Below, piece after piece: positions 27,749-44,540 of a DNA stretch of 64,000 bases (positions are counted from its first letter, which is position 1; the number at the start of each line of letters is the position of its first letter). The notes under the pieces were generated by a model, which searched no databases, was not told the origin of the DNA, and was given only the letters and a program-made list of their open reading frames with translations. Made by a program: the position numbers and the translations under genes. The stretch is from Saccostrea echinata. Its lineage: Eukaryota. Where the stretch lies: NCBI RefSeq assembly GCF_033153115.1, contig NW_026889751.1, forward strand, positions 434,001 to 498,000, read 5' to 3'.

Positions 27749-29695
27749 CTTCCAAGGGGAGATAATTAAGAATTCGTGAAAAATTAATGGCATCATTAAA
27801 AAATCTTCTTCTCAAGAACCACTGTGCTTGAAAACATGAAACTTATGTGGAAGCATCCTCAGGTAGTGTAGATTCAAGTTTGTTCAAATCATGACCCCCG
27901 GGGCTAGGGTGGGGCCGCAATGGGCGATCAAAGTTTTACATAGGAAATATACAGGAAAAATCTTTCAAAATCTTCTTCTCAAGAACAGCAAAGCCATAAT
28001 TGGTCATATTTATATGGTAGCATCCTCAGATAGTGTACATTCAAATTTATTCAAATCATGACCCCCGGGGGTAGGGTGGGGCCACAATGGGCGATCAAAG
28101 TTTTACATAGGAATATATAGGAAAAATCTTTAAACATCTTCTTCTCAAGAACATCAAAGCCATAATTGGTCATATTTACATGGAAGCATCTTCAGGTAGT
28201 GTAGATTCAAATTTGTTCAAATCATGACCCCCGGGGGTCGGGTGGGACCACAATGGGCGATCAAAGTTTTACATAGGAATATATAGGAAAAATCTTTAAA
28301 AATCTTCTTCTCAAGAACAGCAAAGCCATGATTGGTCATATTTACATGGAAGCATCCTCAGATAGTGTACATTCAAATTTATTCAACTCATGACCCCCGG
28401 GGGTCGGGTGGGGCCACAATGGCGATCAAAGTTTTACATAGGAACACATAGTAAAAATCTTCTTCTCAAGAACAGCAAAGCTATGATTGGTCATATTTAT
28501 ATGGTAGCATCCTCAGATAGTGTACATTCAAATTTGTTCAACTCATGACCCCCGGGGGTCGGGTGGGGCCACAATGGGCGATCAAAGTTTTACATAGGAA
28601 CACATAGTAAAAATCTTCTTCTCAAGAACAGCAAAGCCATGATTGGTCATATTTATATGGAAGCATTCTTAGATAGTGTACATTCAAGTTTGTTCAAACA
28701 TGACCCCTGGGGATCGGGTGGGGCCACAATGGGTGATCAAAGTTTTACATAGGAATACATAGGTTAAATCTTTAAAAATCTTCTACTCAAGAACAGCAAA
28801 GCCATGATTGGTCATATCTAAATGGAAGCATCCTCAGACAATGTAGATTCAAATTTGTTCAATTCCTGACCCCCCCCCTCCCAACCACTTTTATATTTAA
28901 ACTTTTCAACCTTTCAAGATTGAAGTGATTTCTGCTTTTTCCTAGCCAAAGTGCTCAGGTGAGCGATGTGGCCCCTGGGCCTCTTGTTGTACAATAACTA
29001 AGACACACAATGGCTGATATTTTTACCCTTGATAATCAGGAAACTTGTGTGTACTGCTTTATTTGTCAGGTGATGAAAGTTAAACTACAGCCCCCTTCAG
29101 CCACTGATCTACCTGCATACAATCCTATTCTCCCACCTGCTGCCATCACTCAAGTTATGTTGCTGGCCAACCCACAAAAGGTAAAGACAGTTATCAAGTC
29201 ATTCCTTATTACAGTCCAAATGAACTGTACTTATATATACTGTCAATTAATAATCTGAAGTAGACTGTCTGTTTGGATAAGATATTATTAGGAATACAGT
29301 AAAACACGCTTATAGCGAACACGCTTATAATAAATTGACACTTAAATTGAAGTTGTTTTCATCCCCCCATTGCTTTAAATATTTTGTGAACTCAACTGAT
29401 ATAACAAATTATGTTTAGAACGAAGCAAAAATATCCCTCCTTGGTGCTTTGTTATAAGCGTGTTTTACTGTATTAAAACCCCATAAAAGAATATTACTAT
29501 TAAAGTAATATACTTGAATGGAAAAAAGTTTTTCTGAATAAACTTGTACCCTGTACAAGTATTTTGATAATTTTGGCACTCATAATTGACTTGTCATTTC
29601 AGGAAAAAGTGCGATTAAAATTCAAGATATCTTACAATGTAAATGGAGAGAATCTATCTGATGTTGGAGAGGTGGACAATTTTACAGTGTTATAA
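11303..29695 (+). CDS. GGA1: ADP-ribosylation factor-binding protein GGA (VHS-GAT-hinge-GAE clathrin adaptor), ~678 aa
   Basis: 17 exons: 11303-11339, 14985-15145, 15327-15425, 15640-15798, 16813-16878, 16978-17058, 17179-17316, 17410-17494, 18214-18309, 19300-19410, 20394-20479, 20975-21182, 21995-22136, 23760-23959, 27237-27400, 29070-29180, 29603-29695 (2037 nt, phases consistent). VHS (ATNPANRDEDW, VGKFRFLNEMIKVVSPKYLG), GAT (FEDEEKSKLLAKLLKSKNPQDLQAANRLIKNMV), hinge LLDL and DEELL motifs, GAE (FQAAVPKVMKVKLQPPSATDLPAYNPILPPAAITQVMLLANP). Probably co-orthologous to vertebrate GGA1/2/3. Confidence 0.95.
11519..12177. mobile_element. TIR MITE with ~90-bp TIRs, CAGG...CCTG ends and an apparent 5-bp TSD
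   Basis: caggtccagtacaatcagtacatttagctacgtagc... is inverted at ...gctacgtagctaaatctagtgattgtaccagacctg. The sequence atgta flanks both ends. Confidence 0.85.
12261..12632. mobile_element. Degenerate TIR element with a terminal hairpin
   Basis: tagagtacgtcccatatacttgcaatgtagc resembles the reverse complement of gctacattgccaatacacggaacgaattcta (ends ~12587). It is followed by the hairpin ttctatcgttaaa...tttaacgatagaa. Confidence 0.5.
12642..13607 (-). mobile_element. HINE-type element, family 'gtcccctaccgg', copy 2 (different cargo)
   Basis: aacaagcattctgagagtattgcataagcaatacatgtcccctaccgg ... (GACA)n at 13495-13558 ... aaacctatagtcccctacattttcaccggtaggggactaat. Two ~190-bp internal repeats start at gacaacctcgtttt (~13090 and ~13278). 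Confidence 0.85.
17600..18028. mobile_element. Hairpin-core non-autonomous element
   Basis: A 150-bp inverted repeat at 17600-17749 centred on ccgaggtggcgaagccgccgagg, then a tail bounded by inverted ttttattatac / gtataataaaa. Confidence 0.7.
18655..19048. mobile_element. hAT-like MITE
   Basis: TIRs TAGGGATG / CATCCCTA. The 8-bp flanks aattttta / gattttta match at 7 of 8 positions, consistent with a hAT TSD. Subterminal tatcg/cgat repeats. Confidence 0.75.
19470..20185 (+). mobile_element. Degraded HINE of the same family as 9318-10470
   Basis: Shares the 5' motif gcatttagtgtttgtcatgtcc plus a ctgtc microsatellite, and the 3' motif ggggcattcatgtc...catattt. Confidence 0.5.
20550..20791. mobile_element. 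Short TIR MITE
   Basis: gagttattccccttggccaccatgttgaag is inverted at ctccaatatggcagccaaagggaaataactc. Confidence 0.7.
22168..23532 (+). mobile_element. HINE/pearl-type element with diverged ~160-170-bp repeats
   Basis: 5' taggtcacctgagtcatacaggtgacctattgcta hairpin, repeats containing gtgaaaatgca...aaaatcttct...atgagcaagggtgcct, 3' aggcccttgggtctc stem. Same family as 31535-33786. Confidence 0.8.
24070..24222 (-). mobile_element. Truncated remnant of the pearl/CvA-like family
   Basis: gcccttcatttgaacaaac...cctttacccaaggatac...gacagacagac is the reverse complement of the 5' part of 27535-28988. Confidence 0.65.
24578..25060 (+). mobile_element. HINE-type element, family 'gtcccctaccgg', copy 3
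   Basis: tattagtcccctaccggtgaaaccggaggggactataggtttcc, (GTCT)n, two ~146-bp repeats, then ccggtaggggactagtattgctaatgcaatactctcagaatgcttg. Confidence 0.88.
25395..26496. mobile_element. Tc1/mariner (pogo/Tigger-like) non-autonomous element
   Basis: Perfect 21-bp TIRs CAGGTAAACTTCGGTATCTCG / CGAGATACCGAAGTTTACCTG with a TA TSD. Subterminal gatatgtcgac repeats. No transposase ORF. Confidence 0.88.
27535..28988 (+). mobile_element. pearl/CvA-like HINE carrying a 155-167-bp satellite-like array (Cg170/HindIII-type)
   Basis: 5' ttagctcacctgagccgaaggctcaagtgagctt, then a gtccgtct microsatellite, about 6-7 units (atgacccc at 27891, 28058, 28223, 28390, 28545, 28700), and 3' caggtgagcgatgtggcccctgggcctcttgtt. 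The family name comes from recall of oyster repeats, not a search. Confidence 0.88.
29297..29470. mobile_element. Short Tigger-like MITE
   Basis: TA-CAGTAAAACACGCTTATA ... TATAAGCGTGTTTTACTG-TA. Confidence 0.85.
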
Positions 29696-31534: not shown

Positions 31535-33786
31535 AGAGCCCTGCCAGCACCAAAACACTTGACCAAGTGGTCCAGAATTTCAAAACCTGGTAAAAATACC
31601 CTGCTTATTACAAATTTGTACCATGTTTCCTCCTGGAACAGAGAAGATGATTTGCATAGAAATAATGCATTTTCACTAAAGATTCAACACAGCCCCACCC
31701 TAACAGTAGAGCCCATGACTGAGGGGCCATGAAAATCAAAATTTTGTAAGAGGCACACTTGCTTATCATAACTATGCATTTAGTTGAAGATTTTCAAAGA
31801 ATTAATGCCTTTTCACCATATAATCAATAGAACTCCACCCTAACACAAGAACCCTGACCCTGGGGCCATTAATTTGACAATTTTTGAAAAGGCACCCATG
31901 CTCAACAAACACTGCAATTAGTTTGTTTGCTTAATACCTAAGAGCAGGGAAGAAGATTTTCAAAGAATGTATTTTCACCATATATTCAATATAGTCCCAA
32001 TCTTACACCATAGACCCTAACCCAGGGGCCAAGAAGTTAACAATTTTGGAAGAGGTACTCTTGCTCATTATAACTATGCAATATTAAGTATGTTTGCTAA
32101 AACCCTAGGGGCAGAGCAGAAGACTATGAAAAAACAATGCATTTTCACTATATATTCAATAGAGCCCAATAGAATTAACACCAAATTCCCTGGTTCAGGG
32201 GCTATGAATTTCACACTTTAGGAAGAAACACCATTGTTCATCATTTCCATGCACAAAGTTTATCTGCTAAATACCCAGGAGCAGAGAAGATTTTCAAAGA
32301 AATAATGCATTTTCAATATGTAATCCATAGAACCACGTCCTAACACCAGATCCTCTGACCCAGGGGCATGAAATTCACAATTTTGGAAGATGCACCGATG
32401 CTCATCTTACCAATGCATTTAGTTTTTTGCTTAATAATCAGGAGCAGAGAAGATTCCAAAGAAATAATGCATTTTCACTACATAATCAATATAGCCCCCT
32501 CCATCCCCAACACCAGAACCCCTGACCCTGATGCCACAGATTTTACGCAATTTTGTTTATCTGCTAAGTATACAGGAGCATAAAAATAGATTTTCAAAGA
32601 AATAATGCATTTTTTACTACTTGTATATAAGTAACAGAACCCCCCACTCCCCCAACAAACTTTGGGTCACACAATGTTAAGTGGCACCTTTGCTCATCAC
32701 TATGCACGTAGTTTATCTGCTAAATACCCAGGAGCAGAGAGGAAGATTATCAAAGTCACTTTTTATCAATAGAACCCCACCCTAACACCAGAGCCTCTGA
32801 CCCTGGGAGAATTAATTTCACAATTTTAGAAGAGGCACCTTGCTCATCATGACATTGAATTAAATTTGTTTGCTTAATACCCATGAGCAGAGAGGAAGAT
32901 TTTCAAAGAAATAGTTCTCACTAAATAATCAATACCTAACACCAGAGCCCCTGACCCAGGGGCTGAGAAATTCACAATTCAGCACCCTTGCTCATCATAA
33001 CCATGTACTAAGCATGTTTGCTAAAAACATAAAGGCAGATCAGAAGAATATCAAAGAAACAATGCATCTTCACTATATACTCAACAGAGCCCCACCCAAA
33101 CAAAAAAACCTGGTCCAGGGGCTTTAAATTTCCGAATTTTAAGAGTGGCACATTTGCTCATCATAACCAGGCACCTAGTTTATCTGCTAAATACCCAGGT
33201 GCAGAGAAGATGATTTTCAAAGCAATAAGGCATTTTCACTATATTATCAACAGAACCCTTACACCAGGACCCCTGACCAAGGGGCCATGTAATTCACAAT
33301 TTTGGAAGAGGTACCCTTCCTCATCAACACTATGCACAAAGTTTGTTTGCTTAATACCAAGGAGCAGAGAAGATGATTTCAAAGCAGTTATGACCTTTCA
33401 TTATCTGATCGAGCCCCACCCGAACTCCAGGACCCCTGACCCTGGGGCCATGAATTTCACAATTTTGGTAGAGGGCTCAATGCTGATTACAATCACACCA
33501 ACAGTTTGACTGATTGATGTCCAGGAGTAAAGAAGATTTTAAAAGATAGCACTAATTTTGGTGATTTTAGCCCACCAACCCCTCAGGTCCGAGGGGGGTG
33601 GGGACCATGAAATTCACAATTTCATTCCCATCTACCCATAGATGCTACCTGCCAAAATTGGTTGAAATTGGTTCAGCAGTTGCAGAGAAGCTGAAAATGT
33701 TAAAATGTTAACACACTACGAATGATGCATGGCGACAGACAAAAACAGATAGCAATAGGTCACCTGAGTGACCAAGGTGACCTAAA
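31535..33786 (-). mobile_element. Large HINE with about 12 diverged ~160-bp repeats, between the GGA and AP5Z1 3' ends
   Basis: Ends tagcaataggtcacctgagtgaccaaggtgacctaaaa, the reverse complement of the 22168 element's 5' end. Repeats contain aatgcattttcacta...cctgaccc..gggc...cacaattt. The left boundary is approximate. Confidence 0.8.
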
Positions 33787-37400: not shown

Positions 37401-40400
37401 TCAGAATATTATGGAAGGAAGACAATCTGTTGAGAGAACATAATTATGACTAATGAAATGTTATAGTGCTCATATAAACTGATGGTTTAAAAACACACAA
37501 TAATATCTCTGTATCTTATAAGAATCCACAATGTTTGTATGAATGTGATAATTAACTTGTTTTATGCACAAAGTAAACCACTGACCTATTTATGGTATCT
37601 CCGTGCCCTCCCTCCACTCTTGTGAAGAAATTAAACATTGGCCTGTAGAGGGCACTCTGGAATGCTGACAGTGAGCTGATTGGTTCAGTCTCAGTGGACA
37701 ATGTCTGAGCCTCACTTTTCTTACATCGCTCAGTTACCTCTAAGGCAACTGTCACACAGGGCAAATCCAACAACATATGGAAAACCTAGAACAGTAAAGA
37801 CTGAGAAAAGAGTCAGGGTGACAAACCTCAGTTACCTCTAAAGCAACTGTCACACAGGGCAAATCCAACAACATATGGAATACTTAGAAAAGTAAAAACA
37901 GTAGGGACTGAGAAAGAGAGTCAGGGCGACAAACCATGCATGTTTTACATGCATTTCGTCTTTGTAATGCATTAACCTGTGCAATAGATGTCACTTTTTC
38001 TCCTGGCATGATATATGATACTATTTTCATTTATTTCCATACTGGTATGGCATAGTTGCATTCATTTTATAATTTTATCATGACAGAGTAGCAATTGCAA
38101 TGTAAGATGTACATCCACACAGGTGAAATCTGTACAGTGAAATACTTCAATTCATGAAGAAATCAGAGGCTTAAATAGAAGCAAATGAAGAAGAATATGG
38201 TGGATGAGAATAAATCACTTCCTTTTAATAGACGTGTTCAGCTTTAACTATGGTTTTTTTTAAAAACAAAATTGACCCCCCCCCCCCCCAAACACAACCT
38301 CTGCAAAAAGAAGCATCCATTTATATTATACATGTATAATTATGCATAATAAGACCATGTCCATGGCATGGGACCAAAAGTAAGCAAATTTATACATTTT
38401 TCACACTAACATGCTTAAATTGACTCAATGTTTTTAAATTGCTTAACAAAATGTTGTGCTTAGTCCAACTTCTGTTAAATCCACACTTTCATGAAAGTGT
38501 TATACATTACTCACTTCAGTAGCGGTGGAGGGAGACATCAGTGCTGGCAGTATATCTTCAAAATCAGTCAAATAAGTCCGAGGATTCCAGGCTAGAATCT
38601 GCAAATTACAACAACATGCACCTAAATTATACCATATAGATCTGTTTATTTCAGGTTAAGCTGTTACTCTGGTTAATTTATATGTAATGTCTTTCACGCA
38701 GACCTTGAGGATGTTGGGAAAGTATGTAGACAGTATGGATGTGTTGTGACAGAGAGTTTCAAGGTTATCTTTAATAAAGGTGACTGTATCAAAACTGAAG
38801 GCTGGGTCTAAGTACCACTGAGTCAGCAACTTGTGGAAAAACAATGTATACGCCTCTTGTGGGTCATGCTCTACACTTTTACCTGCATGGGAAGGAAAAT
38901 GCCAAAAAAAAAAAAAAAAAAAATGTAGAAATTACACTAATATTGAATTATACTAATATTAAATGCAGAAAATATCAAGGGAGTGACACAAAAGTATTGG
39001 TTTGAAAGTACAGTATTCCAAGATGAGAATGATTCATAAGTAATAGAGTAAAGAAACAACATTTATTTATATGTATTTTTACATAATACCATGATTAAGG
39101 AAGAATTGTAGAACTGGAATGAGAAGTCTGGCTTTGTCTGGTTCTGCTGCTAGTCTGTTGTACAATCGACGCACCTCCTGGAAAACTCGTGCAACCCGAC
39201 CTGGTTCTATCTTACAAATGATGTCCAGGATATTTACTATCTCCAACAAACACTGGTAAGTAGACAAAGATGGAGACCTATACATGTAGCTAATGCTTCA
39301 GGAATGTTTGTAAAATGGGGCCTAAAATATTCAGAAGTATGGGAAAAAAATATACTTACACAGTTTTGGAGGTCTACGTCTGATGCAACTTTAGGTTCTG
39401 GAAAATACACCCAGATGAGCACCATTTTACAGAACTTCTTATTTAATAAATTTGTATAACGTAATAAAGAAAAAAAAGAAATATAAACACAAATCTTACT
39501 TCTTTCACACTGGTCCAGTATTCTAAAACAGTAATCGATGGATTTATCTACTAAAGAGTTGAACACATGGGCAGATTTATTAGATACTTCCTGGCTCTCC
39601 TCACTAGTAACATGGGAGTGGTACAACCATTTGTACAACATAGAGAAACTATAGATGTTCAAGAACTGGTCATTTGTGTAATACTGGCCTGCAAGAGGTG
39701 AAAATTTAATACAAATAATATCATTATATACACATACATTAAAACTCGGTTAGAAGGAAGTCACTTGGACCTTGAATTTTACTTCCTTATGAGTGATATT
39801 CTTCATATCAGTATGAAGAAAATAATGAAAAGTCTTATCATGGGATTCCTAAAATAATTCCTTATAATCAAGATTTCCTTATAAGCATGTTCTTTACATC
39901 TGAGTTTTACTGTAGTATTAAAATAAAGACATAAGTATTGAGAAAGGGATACACAGTGTAATCATTGACAAGTTAAACACATATCCAAAAGACTTAAAAG
40001 CCAGTCATCTTAAGTCAAGAAAAAGGTGAAGATAACATAATACAGTCAAAGTCATGAACAACATAAGTCAAGAACAGGGCAAAAATAAAAACCCTGGAAT
40101 CACCAGAGGTGGGATCAGGTGCCTAGGAGGATAAAGCATCCCCTGATGACCTGTCACACCAGCTGTGAGTCCTGTGTATTATATAAACAGTTAAAAAGGA
40201 TAATCTGTTGTCAGCATGAGTTTGACAACAATGGCCTAACAATTTGTATTATTAAACATGGAACTTTAAAAATCAGAATATAATTAAAACAAGTTAATGC
40301 TACTAATAAAAAACAATCAGAAATTTCATACCAACATTGAGCACAGTAAAGAAATTTCTGCTGGGAGTTCCATCTACTTCATTTACAACAGTGGCCTGGT

Positions 40401-43400
40401 CTTTCTTGAAAGGATTAATGGTGTAAGGATTTGGGAGTTGATACAGAGAGGCATTCATCAACCAATCACTCACTGTACTATTAACTTCTTTCAGGGTCTC
40501 TGAGTAAAAAAAAGAATAAACTGGCACAATGAAAAAAGATTATGCATCATGGTTGCTTGTGAGCTCAGCACTATACATGTACAGCTAATACTCTGCCAGA
40601 AGTTTATTGTGTAGGACCTGAAATGTGCCAGAAGTTTATTGTGTAGGACCTGAAGTGACACCAGGAAGGACAAGGTCTGTCTTTGTATGGATAACTTACC
40701 CTCTGACAGAAGTTTATTGTGTAGGACCTGAAGTGACACTAGGAAGGAGAAGGCCTGTCTTTGTATGGATAACTTACCCTCTGACAGAGGTTTATTGTGT
40801 AGGACCTGAAGTGACACTAGGAAGGAGAAGGCCTGTCTTTGTATGGATAGCTTACCCTCTGACAGAAGTTTATTGTGTAGGACCTGAAGTGACACCAGGA
40901 AGGACAAGGTCTGTCTTTGTATGGATAACTTACCCTCTGACAGAAGTTTATTGTGTAGGACCTGAAGTGACACTAGGAAGGAGAAGGCCTGTCATGGTAT
41001 GGATAACTTACCCTCTGACAGAAGTTTATTGTGTAGGACCTGAAGTGACACTAGGAAGGAGAAGGCCTGTCTTTGTATGGATAGCTTACCCTCTGACAGA
41101 AGTTTATTGTGTAGGACCTGAAGTGACACCAGGAAGGACAAGGTCTGTCTTTGTATGGATAACTTACCCTCTGACAGAAGTTTATTGTGTAGGACCTGAA
41201 GTGACACTAGGAAGGAGAAGGCCTGTCTTTGTATGGATAGCTTACCCTCTGACAGAAGTTTATTGTGTAGGACCTGAAGTGACACTAGGAAGGAGAAGGC
41301 CTGTCTTTGTATGGATAGCTTACCCTCTGACAGAAGTTTATTGTGTAGGACCTGAAGTGACACCAGGAAGGACAAGGTCTGTCTTTGTATGGATAACTTA
41401 CCCTCTGACAGAAGTTTATTGTGTAGGACCTGAAGTGACACCAGGAAGGAGAAGGCCTGTCTTTGTATGGATAACTTACCCTCTGACAGAAGTTTATTGT
41501 GTAGGACCTGTATTGACACTAGGAAGGAGAAGGTCTGTCTTTTAACATTAAAATCTTCCTTTTCTGAGGACATCCACCTTTAAAATATAAAAACTAAGTT
41601 TAACTTTATTCTAACGGGTGGCTCCATGTTACCAAAGGGCTTACATGAGCATTGCCTGTTGTCTAATTTGTTAACATAATATGCATGAAATACAAAATGA
41701 AAACATTTTTTATGTACATCTAATGTACAATTACACAAGTCTTGAGTATTAAAAATTAACAGAATAGAAACAAAAAATACCTTACAGCTTGTGGAATGAG
41801 GTTAGTTAAACAAAAATTCCTGTTTCCCTGAAATGAGATTTAAACTACTCCTTATTTTCACCATCTTGCATATCCTTGTATACTTACTTTTACTAGGGAC
41901 ACATTCAATTACATGACTGGTTCATAAATTGTAAAAAGCAATATTTTTGATACTCTGGCTTTTGTGTGTTCAACAAGAAGACCATGATTTAATGATATTT
42001 AATATCTTATCAAGCACATGCAACTGCATATAATGTTAGCGAGTAATAGAATTCAGATGTGAAAATGTACACATTTTATGACTTATTGACTTATGTACAT
42101 ATTATTCCTGACTTTGTGTTATTGATTTTGAAAATTGACTTATGTACATATCATTCCTGAATTTATATATAAAAAAAACAACAAAAAAACCCCAAAATTT
42201 AAAGTCCAGTACATTTACATTATTACATTATAATTACACTGTTATCTCACCTGTATTAGATAGAGAGAGAAGCAGTTAGCCGTGGCTTCGGATGATTGAT
42301 AGCCTGTGCTGGGATAGAAGTCGGACCCTAGATCACCCTCATCACGTGGCAAAAGCTCAGCCAAAATCTGCTCACAAAGGAGACATTCTTTTGTTTTGTC
42401 ATGATCCATAGAACTCACCATATTCACCAAAGTTGAAATCATGTTTCTTGGCAAACTAAAAATATTAAACTTATGAACTCAAGACAGACAACAATTAATA
42501 ACAGCATTGAAAAGAAAAGATAATGAAAATAATGATAATGTCATATTGAAATAAGATGGTTGACAGTCTTCTTCTTCCAATAAAGTTCATACCACCATCT
42601 GGATATTTGTTTAACTTAACATGATAAATATGACTTTTTCAACATATGATCAACTAAGCTTAACTCTGGGGCTGAACTCTGAACCCAAGAGACACAGATT
42701 TTACATCACAATATATAAAAATTATCTGTTGGATTCCTAGGAGTTAAGAAATGTAGATGCCGTACTAAGTAAGTTGTACAAGTTAGTTACCAGTTTTTTT
42801 GAGCATGCCTCATGTCTTTTTGACAATTAAAAAAAAATGCGGAACTCAAGTTGGAAAAAAAAAGATAATTAAGGCATACACATTACAGAACTTTCTTCTC
42901 TTTTTGCACAACTAAATTTCTTCAAAGTAACTGTACACTATTACATGTACTCTGTTGGATCACTCGAAATATTCAATAAATATCAATCATCTTTGGGCCT
43001 GGACCCTGCATGGTCAAAGCAGGAACATATATGCTAATGGAATAGGCAACTCCTTTAGCGCCATAGTTATTTGCCATATTTATTTGCCCAAAATGTAAAA
43101 CACAACACTACAAGTTTTTCAAACCATACTTATGTAAAGTAAACAGTTTTTTCTGATGTAATCTGTTCTTTTTGTTTATTGGAATGGAATTTTATTTAAT
43201 TTTAAAGTATGCATTGTAATACATGTATAATTTAAATCATTAAAGCATGAATTTCATTATTATAAATCATTATCATCATACAGATGAGTTTGCCTGTTAG
43301 ATGTCTAGACATAAAGATGATTTTTAAAGAAATAAAGCACTTTCAATATACAATCTACTTTGCAGCACACTTTGGTTTTGTTGCCTTTGTTTTTTTTCCG

Positions 43401-44540
43401 TCATTATCAAAATTCCTAAGGAACTAAGGTAAACTGTTTCTGAAATTGTCAGAACTCTGCCTAGAAATTTGGCTAGACTAATGTGCAGACTCAATTAATT
43501 TTTTTCTGCTCTTGTGTATTGGTTGTTATTGCTCACTAAATAATGTGAGGCATTAATTGTAAGAGCCAGTGCCACCCGACACTGTGATCTCTTAAAGCAA
43601 TGCATGGGTGAAGAGAAAATTTGGACTGTGCAAATTGATCCAAATGAATTTTTTTCCACAGTAGCCTGAAGACCCACAATGCAATGCAAATGCATCTCGC
43701 TGCTAACTACACTCCTGCGGTAACAACAAAAGTTCACAAAAAATTAACTCACTTTGATTTAATGGATATTGCATATGGATAGTGGATTAAACATTCTTTT
43801 TTTTAAAAAATTTGCACCTTTCAAACTTCGAAATATGGAAATGTAACTAACATACGACATCAAATGACATCACTGTCTAGATGTTCCAAATGTATTGTGC
43901 ATTTTAAAAAGGCAGATTTAATTATTACAAAAGTGAATAGGTATCCAATAATACACAACTGAGCTCGCCCCAACAGTCGCACCATCAACATATACTTCAC
44001 ATACCATGGCTCAGTGCTAGAGGACTGTAGAATGAAATAGAGTTGCCGCAGCTGGTTCATACATTCAGTAGATTTCTCTGGTGCATAAAGATTTTCCAGA
44101 ATACCATGACAAATTCTGTCAATTTCTTCTTGAGGTGTCTTACTATTAAAAAATGATAATAATATTAATAAACACTTATGCCCCTCCCCCTGATAATTCT
44201 ACAGATATTTAGAACAGGTGGTCTGACGTCATATACTATGAAAGAATAACCATTTATAAACTGAAAAACTTAAACGTTACACTTTATATCGTCAAAACTT
44301 GTGTAAGAAAATTCAACATTAGACTTTCCCTTTTCTCAAATTGAATGTAAATAGAGAAAATTCGGGCTATATATGAGGGAGCTAGATAAGAACTAAAAGA
44401 AGAGGAATCAATCCATATGACTTTGCATATGGTAAACAGGATGAACAATTAAGTAAAACAAAATATCAATAAAGCTTTGACGATTTAGAATATATGTACC
44501 TTGCTTGAGAAAAGAGACTGTCGATCATAGAAAGCGCCAT
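34454..44540 (-). CDS. AP5Z1: AP-5 complex subunit zeta-1, ~779 aa
   Basis: 18 exons (-): 44540-44500, 44142-44005, 42455-42251, 41827-41781, 41577-41480, 40499-40332, 39688-39500, 39397-39360, 39252-39090, 38882-38704, 38598-38515, 37785-37586, 37426-37340, 36163-36041, 35936-35804, 35579-35397, 35288-35137, 34565-34454 (2340 nt, phases consistent). Recognisable motifs: EVDGTPSRNFFTVLNVGQYYTNDQFLNIYSFSMLYKWL, YCFRILDQCERK, FPNILKILAWNP, LLDLPC, VWCVGE, KLASKCQDLIPR, RWHRDNTSLP. Confidence 0.93.
37729..37936. repeat. ~98-bp tandem duplication spanning the AP5Z1 exon-12 acceptor
   Basis: ctcagttacctctaa[g/a]gcaactgtcacacagggcaaatccaacaacatatggaa occurs at 37729 and 37827, each followed by gactgagaaa..agtcaggg.gacaaacc. 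Confidence 0.9.
39737..39912. mobile_element. Degenerate Tigger-like MITE
   Basis: ta-cattaaaactcggttag ... catctgagttttactg-ta, with the same size and architecture as 29297-29470. Confidence 0.55.
40022..40176 (-). mobile_element. Retroelement 3' fragment (RTE-X-like tail, tentative)
   Basis: ccagaggtgggatcaggtgcctaggagg..agcatcccctg...gtcacaccagctgtgag. A related piece lies in the opposite orientation at 50731-50780 (gggctcacagctggtgtgactgg). The family assignment is from recall only. Confidence 0.5.
40597..41543. repeat. 78-bp VNTR (~11.7 copies) amplifying the AP5Z1 exon-5/intron-5 junction
   Basis: Unit agaagtttattgtgtaggacctgaagtgacactaggaaggagaaggcctgtctttgtatggataacttaccctctgac. The 26-aa periodicity is visible in ORFs on both strands. 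Confidence 0.97.

What the first reader, a model, noticed from the sequence alone, without database searches (positions are those of the whole stretch)
40597..41577. Splice-donor ladder: a VNTR amplifying an AP5Z1 exon end into 11 in-phase 5' splice sites
Seen (- strand): each 78-bp unit is the last ~63 nt of exon 5 plus the first ~15 nt of the intron, including GAGG|GTAAG(T/C). Donors fall at 41479, 41401, 41323 ... 40699. Because 78 = 3x26, donors 1-7 all join exon 6 (40499) in frame, adding 0-6 copies of GKLSIQRQAFSFLVSLQVLHNKLLSE. A variant unit creates TGA at 40994-40992, so donors 8-11 include a premature stop. Inference: a copy-number-tunable rheostat yielding either AP-5 zeta isoforms with repeated helical segments or NMD substrates. 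This is the best candidate for an undescribed system in the window, though it may be a tolerated neutral expansion.
Basis: partly seen in the sequence, partly recalled or inferred. Interest (0 to 1): 0.8.

Follow-up and report, generated by a model that had tools for sequence, protein, structure and literature searches.

The report
Splice-junction "mirage" minisatellite in oyster AP5Z1
An intron of an oyster's AP5Z1 gene starts with eleven tandem copies of the preceding exon's end and its splice signal; this is a real repeat of an already described kind ("mirage" minisatellites) and is probably harmless, not a new regulatory device.

Summary
Window 40629-41542 holds a 78-bp x 11.7 tandem array (95% match). 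Its first unit overlaps the 3' end of a 98-nt AP5Z1 exon (- strand, 41577..41480), so AGG|GTAAG(T/C) recurs 11 times at exactly 78-nt spacing. The frame stays open through six units, and unit 7 carries TGA (40994-40992).

The "undescribed rheostat" reading is not supported. This is a splice-junction ("mirage") minisatellite. The kind is described in human F7, IFI6, CBS, LMNB2 and PDGF and in amphioxus Adh3 and globin genes, where the exon-adjacent donor is used exclusively or nearly so. This scan has already reported many such arrays on other DNA of this same oyster genome.

RNA contigs from three runs join 41480 to 40499, which is the first donor. They come from another haplotype that may lack the array. 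The one run that matches the assembly holds array sequence at about 0.25-0.4 of exon depth. Unspliced RNA can explain that, and the run cannot resolve donor choice.

Orthologues have one copy of the segment. The units carry a stop and a Leu->Pro change, so they show no coding constraint. Each unit equals one helix plus a loop of the solenoid.

The array is most likely a recent, private, near-neutral expansion. Use of downstream donors in carriers remains untested.

The parts
41480..41577 (-). Its last ~63 nt are copy 0 of the repeat.
   Evidence: RNA joints lie on both sides, 41577/41781 and 41480/40499, with GT..AG. Orthologue alignment. Frame check.
41474..41482 (-). Authentic 5' splice site AGG|GTAAGT (exon end 41480, intron starts 41479). 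It is the only donor with transcript evidence.
   Evidence: The joint 40499<->41480 is seen in one contig each of runs X2, X5 and X3. Donor 9-mers are listed.
40629..41542 (-). 78-bp x 11.7 minisatellite. Units 1-11 begin at 41479, 41401 ... 40699 and each starts with a copy of the donor. There is a three-unit (234-bp) higher-order periodicity.
   Evidence: TRF. Unit table and identity matrix. 234-bp blocks are 99-100% identical and found only here in the genome.
40695..41404 (-). Ten reiterated pseudo-donors, AGG|GTAAGT or AGG|GTAAGC, with GT at 41401/41400 ... 40699/40698.
   Evidence: No RNA joint from any of them was seen.
40992..40994 (-). In-frame TGA in unit 7 (CAAAGA -> CCATGA, giving Q6P and R7*). 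It would be included by donors 8-11.
40594..40654 (-). Degenerate end of the array. Unit 11 is truncated and followed by a 32-bp x 1.9 partial repeat without an intact donor.
40500..40593 (-). Unique tail of the intron with the pyrimidine tract and the acceptor ...TTTATTCTTTTTTTTACTCAG|.
40332..40499 (-).
   Evidence: RNA joints. Pfam TPR_AP5Z1 E 7e-07. Frame check.

Best explanation
This is a "mirage"-type splice-junction minisatellite. A 78-bp piece spanning the end of an AP5Z1 exon and the first 15 nt of its intron was duplicated in tandem. It then expanded recently, by unequal exchange of one- and three-unit blocks, to about 11 copies, all of which now lie inside the 980-nt intron.

Splicing takes the exon-adjacent (most upstream) donor and removes the whole array with the intron, so the normal single-copy AP-5 zeta protein is made. 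The ten reiterated donors are intact but silent or nearly so. The array is a private, near-neutral and probably length-variable by-product of repeat instability, not a device.

Shown: the anatomy, the real splice borders, uniqueness of the array, the single copy in orthologues, and the lack of coding constraint. Inferred: that carriers of the array use the first donor almost exclusively.
For: - Array and donors are confirmed.
- The only joint over the array is 41480->40499 with GT..AG, in RNA contigs of three runs from two studies. One of them is a 2780-nt contig that runs through all neighbouring exons.
- All RNA-supported exons keep frame without stops.
- The array is private to this locus.
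- Blocks of 3 units are 99-100% identical, which points to recent growth.
- Unit variants are 2 synonymous against Ala->Thr, Phe->Leu, Gln->Pro, a stop and Leu->Pro, as expected without selection on coding.
- Saccostrea cucullata, Ostrea edulis, Crassostrea virginica and more distant molluscs have one copy of the segment.
- No protein with the repeated 26-residue unit was found in the 5.8-billion-protein collection (length limits apply).
- In the AlphaFold model of the S. cucullata orthologue (pLDDT 83.8), the duplicated residues 125-145 are most of one helix (122-138) plus the following loop. A unit therefore adds a single helix to an antiparallel helical repeat.
- Precedent in human genes (PMC1557585): the same architecture uses only the most upstream donor in F7, LMNB2 and PDGF, and at most the next two in IFI6 and CBS.
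- Precedent in amphioxus (PMC3087553): mirages do not disturb regular splicing.
- In run X1, which matches the assembly, array sequence sits at about 3.75x per copy against 10-15x for exons. X1 also has patchy contigs in other introns, so unspliced RNA suffices to explain this.
Against: - The three runs that show the first-donor joint carry about 2% exonic differences from the window. They show no array contig, although X2 has a contig in another intron. Their genome may therefore lack the array, in which case they do not test donor choice.
- In the matching run X1 no contig crosses the exon 5 - exon 6 junction. The contigs stop at 41550 and 40499, and I could not fully explain the stop at 40499.
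- All 11 donors are strong (8 of 9 consensus positions), and seven are identical to the authentic one.
- Classical duplicated-site experiments gave opposite answers on which copy wins, as discussed in PMC1557585. Oysters may also rely more on intron definition, which would favour the donor 200 nt from the acceptor; this last point is my inference.
- The data are contigs only, and contigs drop rare isoforms.
Confidence: 0.65

Rival explanations
1. Leaky ladder without function. The first donor dominates, but the next one or two pseudo-donors are used constitutively at a low level. This would give minor mRNAs with +78 or +156 nt (+26 or +52 residues, in frame), as in human IFI6 and CBS.
For: [quoted passage not shown] Donors 2 to 7 are as strong as donor 1 and in frame. 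Contigs cannot show minor isoforms, and X1 is unresolved.
Against: No such joint was seen in any of four runs. No protein fragment with unit-unit or unit-exon 6 sequence exists in the protein collection. Earlier notes of this scan report exon-adjacent use only, for three other arrays of this genome (unchecked).
Confidence: 0.2
2. Damaging allele. With all donors occupied by U1, the donor nearest the acceptor (donor 11, giving a 200-nt intron) or other downstream donors win. Most transcripts of this haplotype would then include unit 7's stop and be degraded, making it a hypomorphic AP5Z1 allele carried in a highly polymorphic oyster.
For: The donors are identical and strong, and donor 11 leaves a short intron. 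The exon's own copy has private Lys and Ile changes at residues that other oysters conserve, which could reflect relaxed constraint. X1 shows array sequence in RNA and no exon 5-6 contig.
Against: Array depth per copy in X1 is only about 0.25-0.4 of exon depth, so most steady-state transcripts lack it. Exons of the assembly's haplotype are expressed at ordinary depth with no mismatch. All other exons are intact. Precedents point the other way.
Confidence: 0.07
3. Selected rheostat. Array length tunes the ratio of normal, helix-inserted and NMD-targeted AP5Z1 mRNA.
For: The unit is in phase and six units stay open. VNTR length is known to associate with splicing at many human loci (abstract of PMC10078293, listed).
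Against: The in-phase property is expected by chance about one time in four. There is no coding constraint in the units. Orthologues have a single copy. A single-helix insertion into a helical repeat is likely to disrupt it. No transcript evidence exists. The same kind of array occurs at many unrelated junctions of this genome, which points to a mutational bias and not to gene-specific function.
Confidence: 0.03
4. Assembly artefact. The array, or its length, is a mis-assembly.
For: No long-read support could be inspected here.
Against: A 108-nt RNA contig from run X1 matches a unit-to-unit junction with no mismatch and is a closed 31-mer cycle, as a tandem array must give. The units carry an ordered three-unit variant pattern and not a collapsed or stuttered one. 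There is no second copy or haplotig in the assembly.
Confidence: 0.02

Closest known systems
Human F7 intron 7 minisatellite (37 bp x 5-9), Borensztajn et al. 2006, PMC1557585
   Same: The first monomer spans the exon-intron boundary, so the authentic donor is followed by identical pseudo-donors in the intron. The pseudo-sites are intact and potentially functional. In F7 the array is length-polymorphic and only the most upstream site is used.
   Different: The F7 monomer holds only 4 exon bases and a weak donor (UGG|gugggu). Here it holds 63 exon bases and a near-consensus donor. The unit here is a multiple of 3 and stays open, so use of pseudo-sites 2-7 would stay in frame. Donor choice and polymorphism are not measured here, and the host is a mollusc, not a mammal.
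Amphioxus "mirages" (Adh3; globin genes BflGb6 and BflGb9), PMC3087553
   Same: They are minisatellite-like tandem duplications of exon-intron boundaries, private to each gene, with units of 10-160 bp. Regular splicing is not disturbed. They evolve in concert, with the boundary units left out of homogenisation. The phenomenon recurs across the genome.
   Different: The phylum differs. I found no mollusc report in the paper library, though I did not search for one specifically. Somatic or allelic length instability is shown in amphioxus but was not tested here.
Human IFI6 (6-16) intron 2 and CBS intron 13 minisatellites, as summarised in PMC1557585
   Same: They are boundary-spanning minisatellites with many pseudo-donors. 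They show that the next one or two copies can be used constitutively, which is the precedent for a small ladder.
   Different: Ladder products are documented there. None is seen here.
Human LMNB2 (100 bp x 10-15) and PDGF (81 bp x 16-18) boundary minisatellites, as summarised in PMC1557585
   Same: Unit size and copy number are similar to this array. Only the authentic donor is used.
   Different: No transcript data from array carriers are available here.

Membership tests
Splice-junction ("mirage") minisatellite | Head-to-tail tandem array of a 10-160-bp unit | tested here: met
   TRF gives 78 bp x 11.7 copies, 95% matches and no indels.
Splice-junction ("mirage") minisatellite | The first monomer spans a real exon-intron boundary, so the authentic splice site is reiterated inside the intron | tested here: met
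   An RNA joint at 41480/40499 with GT..AG fixes the boundary. The exon's last 63 nt plus 15 intron nt make up the unit, and there are 11 copies of AGG|GTAAG.
Splice-junction ("mirage") minisatellite | The array is private to its gene and is not a dispersed satellite or transposon | tested here: met
   Searches of the 923-Mb own genome with 3 units and with the flank found this locus only.
Splice-junction ("mirage") minisatellite | Regular splicing uses the exon-adjacent copy, with pseudo-sites silent or nearly so | tested here: inconclusive
   The first-donor joint is seen in three runs, but these come from a haplotype that may lack the array. The matching run X1 is unresolved.
Splice-junction ("mirage") minisatellite | Length instability or polymorphism, and concerted evolution with divergent boundary units | tested here: inconclusive
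   Concerted three-unit blocks are seen, and the exon copy and the last unit are the most divergent. Copy-number variation among animals could not be tested.
AP5Z1 (AP-5 complex zeta subunit) | Pfam TPR_AP5Z1, SPG48 and TPR_AP5Z1_C domains in order, and orthology to annotated AP5Z1 | tested here: met
   Exon-by-exon Pfam hits down to E 1e-19. tblastn of mollusc AP5Z1 proteins covers all exons, up to 97% identity to S. cucullata.
Regulated alternative 5' splice site / NMD switch | Transcripts that use the alternative donors | tested here: inconclusive
   None was seen in contigs of four runs. Contigs cannot show rare forms.
Regulated alternative 5' splice site / NMD switch | Conservation of the alternative region across species, or constraint on its sequence | tested here: not met
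   Orthologous proteins have one copy. The units carry a stop, Leu->Pro and other replacements.

The most novel reading that the evidence does not exclude
In animals that carry the array, a measurable share of AP5Z1 pre-mRNA is spliced from donors 2-11. Array length would then set the proportions of normal mRNA, mRNAs with one to six extra 26-residue helices, and stop-containing mRNAs. That would make it a heritable dosage dial on the AP-5 complex, and a natural 11-site test bed for 5' splice-site choice outside vertebrates.
Probability: 0.07. Interest if true: 0.5.

Novelty: new member of a known kind. Interest (0 to 1): 0.2.

Why it matters
On its own it matters little. It is one more boundary-spanning minisatellite, most likely spliced out whole.

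It has some value as a clean natural substrate for asking how a spliceosome picks one of eleven equally strong donors in a mollusc, because the products would stay in frame and be easy to size.

It also adds one donor-side case, and a two-copy acceptor-side case in the same gene, to the recurrent "mirage" phenomenon that this scan has noted across this oyster genome. The cause of that phenomenon, a bias of tandem duplication towards splice junctions, is the more interesting open question.

Tried and rejected
- **The look-up of encoding contigs was closed.** I could not fetch the S. cucullata, Ostrea or Logan loci to see whether the orthologous intron has the array.
- **Protein searches for translated units found nothing.** I used the 195-residue open frame and two units. 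The length windows (107-341 and 29-91 residues) limit what this means.
- **The representative search returned mostly fragments.** I ran it with one conserved exon. The full-length relatives it did return served to anchor the exons.
- All runs were Logan contigs, so there are no raw reads, no isoform ratios and no strand information.
- **I tried to read donor use from where X1's contigs end.**
  - The end at 41550 fits a branch caused by occasional skipping of the 47-nt exon. Exon 3 ends CAG and the 47-nt exon ends AAG.
  - The 108-nt contig is a closed k-mer cycle.
  - The start at exactly 40499 stayed unexplained.
  - I rejected the first idea, that array depth in X1 proves inclusion in mRNA. 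About 3.75x per copy is compatible with the patchy intron coverage seen elsewhere in X1.
- **The Pfam hits on the repeat frame are spurious.** Hits to PH_LRR1, MC5, CAF1 and others come from summing weak hits over repeats, with no single significant stretch.
- **The 307-residue + strand open frame over the array is likewise a by-product of a stop-free repeat unit.**
- **No joined (spliced) model was sent to any tool.** Exons were searched one by one by reference, and frames were checked exon by exon.

Full report
**What is there.** Tandem Repeats Finder reports one array of period 78 with 11.7 copies, 95% matches, no indels and score 1667 at 40629-41542. A degenerate 32-bp x 1.9 tail follows at 40594-40654. 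Read on the - strand, GAGG|GTAAG recurs eleven times at exact 78-nt spacing, with the first intron base at 41479, 41401 ... 40699. Seven sites read AGG|GTAAGT and four read AGG|GTAAGC, which is 8 or 7 of the 9 positions of the MAG|GTRAGT consensus. Each unit is the last ~63 nt of the exon plus the first 15 nt of the intron. In the exon's frame a unit reads GKLSIQRQAFSFLVSLQVLHNKLLSE. The frame stays open through units 1-6, and unit 7 carries CAAAGA->CCATGA (Gln->Pro, Arg->stop; TGA at 40994-40992).

**The gene and its exons.**
- Stop-free frames on the - strand between 44198 and 35049 hit Pfam TPR_AP5Z1, SPG48 and TPR_AP5Z1_C in order.
- Mollusc AP5Z1 proteins align exon by exon, up to 97% identical for Saccostrea cucullata. 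The host is therefore a Saccostrea-like oyster, and earlier notes of this scan name S. echinata.
- RNA contigs laid on 38600-44250 give eight introns, all GT..AG.
- The exons are 44141..44005, 42455..42251, 41827..41781 (47 nt), 41577..41480 (98 nt, the repeated one), 40499..40332, 39688..39500, 39397..39360 (38 nt), 39252..39090 and 38882..38704.
- Checked exon by exon, the phases fit and no exon has a stop.
- I searched exons singly by reference.

**Anatomy of the array.**
- It is private. A three-unit query and the unique flank find only this locus in the 923-Mb assembly, and there is no second haplotig.
- The units fall into three types that recur in order, so 234-bp blocks are 99-100% identical. 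This is the signature of recent growth by unequal exchange.
- The differences among units are two synonymous changes (Leu3, Leu13) against Ala9Thr, Phe10Leu, Gln6Pro, Arg7stop and Leu23Pro. The numbers are small, but nothing suggests selection for coding.
- The most divergent copies are the two ends, that is the exon's own copy and the truncated unit 11. The same is described for amphioxus mirages.

**Transcript evidence.**
- Runs X2 and X5 (one study) and X3 (another study, another organism label) each have a contig that joins 41480 to 40499, skipping 980 nt. In X3 it is a 2780-nt contig that runs through all neighbouring exons. That is the first donor, and no other joint touches the array.
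- The caveat is that these three runs share about 2% exonic differences from the window. In exon 5 they differ at 41513, 41534 and 41543, where they carry the letters of the unit consensus and of other oysters.
- They also show no contig on the array, although X2 does have a contig in another intron (41865-42063). Their genome may therefore lack the array, in which case they do not test donor choice.

**Run X1.** This run is labelled "DNA?" but has spliced contigs, and it matches the window without a mismatch.
- Its contigs stop at 41550 and at 40499. A separate 108-nt contig of depth 21.5 lies on a unit-unit junction.
- That contig is a closed 31-mer cycle (78 + 30 nt, with the first 30 equal to the last 30). 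Its k-mers occur 5.73 times on average in the array, which gives about 3.75x per copy against 10-15x for the exons.
- X1 also has patchy contigs in other introns, so unspliced RNA is enough to explain this.
- The run does prove, independently of the assembly, that tandem units exist. It also caps the steady-state share of array-containing transcripts at roughly a quarter to 40%.
- The stop at 41550 fits a branch from occasional skipping of the 47-nt exon. The start at exactly 40499 I could not explain.

**Comparison with relatives.**
- S. cucullata, Ostrea edulis, Crassostrea virginica, a Logan oyster transcript, Pecten and the gastropod Batillaria all have a single ...AVRWMSSGKEDFNVQRQAFSFLVSLQVLHNKLLSE|ETL....
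- The consensus unit keeps these ancestral residues. The window's own exon copy reads KRQTFSFLVSIQ. Its Thr is shared with one unit type, and its Lys and Ile are private.
- No protein with the repeated unit was found in the large protein collection, within the tool's length limits.
- An AlphaFold model of the S. cucullata protein (35-sequence alignment, mean pLDDT 83.8) places helices at 100-116, 122-138 and 145-160. The duplicated residues 125-145 are most of one helix plus the loop after it. A unit would thus insert a single helix into an antiparallel helical repeat, which I infer is more likely to disrupt than to tune.

**What is known.**
- Borensztajn et al. 2006 (PMC1557585) describe exactly this architecture: minisatellites whose first monomer spans an exon-intron boundary.
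- The human cases they list are F7 intron 7 (37 bp x 5-9), IFI6/6-16 (25 pseudo-sites), CBS intron 13, LMNB2 (100 bp x 10-15) and PDGF (81 bp x 16-18).
- In F7, LMNB2 and PDGF only the most upstream donor is used. In IFI6 and CBS the next two are used as well.
[quoted passage not shown] Only pseudo-sites raised to a perfect consensus shifted splicing.
- In amphioxus the same structures are called "mirages" (Adh3, globins). They do not disturb regular splicing and are length-unstable (PMC3087553).
- Earlier notes of this scan report many such arrays in other windows of this same genome. For three of them, transcripts use only the exon-adjacent copy (AI notes, unchecked by me).
- In this gene I found a second case at an acceptor: two copies of about 98-108 nt at 37729-37935.

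**How it most likely works.** A slipped or unequal exchange duplicated the junction. Further exchanges of one- and three-unit blocks then expanded it. The spliceosome takes the first donor after the exon and the array leaves with the intron.
- I put 0.65 on this reading.
- A harmless leak to the next one or two donors, as in IFI6 and CBS, gets 0.2.
- A damaging allele, in which downstream donors win and unit 7's stop triggers decay, gets 0.07.
- A selected rheostat gets 0.03.
- An assembly artefact gets 0.02.

The weak point is that donor choice in a proven carrier was not observed.

**Limits.** There were no raw reads and no population data.

**Verdict.** The interpretation as a new system is not supported. 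This is a new member of a known kind that the scan has already met repeatedly in this genome, and it is of low interest by itself.

Noticed in passing
window 37729-37935 (- strand): A second junction duplication in the same AP5Z1 gene. There are two tandem copies (spacing 98-108 nt, 91-93% identical) of the intron end, the acceptor and the first ~55 nt of the exon that starts near 37785 (..FHMLLDLPCVTVALEVTE). The upstream copy is followed by GTTTGT, so it could act as a pseudo-exon.
   Followed up: partly
window 41513, 41534, 41543 (exon 5): The assembly's exon copy encodes Lys, Thr and Ile where RNA contigs of runs X2, X3 and X5, the consensus repeat unit and other oysters have Gln, Ala and Leu. 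All three differences change the residue, whereas most other exonic differences between the two haplotypes fall at third codon positions.
   Followed up: partly
window 41781-41827 and 39360-39397 (- strand): Two very short AP5Z1 exons (47 nt and 38 nt) are supported by RNA contigs. In run X1 a contig ends at 41550, which is where a k-mer branch from occasional skipping of the 47-nt exon (frame-shifting) would fall.
   Followed up: partly
window about 40090-40300 (intron after exon 6): A short stretch has contig depth up to 450, against about 10-20 for exons, in all four runs. Many contigs run off into unlike sequence at 40103 and 40145. It is probably a fragment of a highly expressed or high-copy repeat.
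   Followed up: no
window 40622-41542 (+ strand): A 307-residue open frame runs antisense through the whole array. It is a by-product of a stop-free 78-nt unit and not evidence of a gene. The Pfam hits on the sense repeat frame (PH_LRR1, MC5, CAF1) are likewise summed weak repeat hits.
   Followed up: yes
window 27843-28874, 22718-23252, 31786-33474: Arrays of a ~160-166-bp satellite-like unit (up to 6.3 copies, 71-90% matches) lie in and after the GGA-like gene. They are unrelated to splice junctions and are probably a dispersed repeat family.
   Followed up: no
run X1: The run is labelled "DNA?" but holds spliced contigs for every AP5Z1 intron laid, so it is an RNA data set. It is the only run identical to the assembly.
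   Followed up: yes
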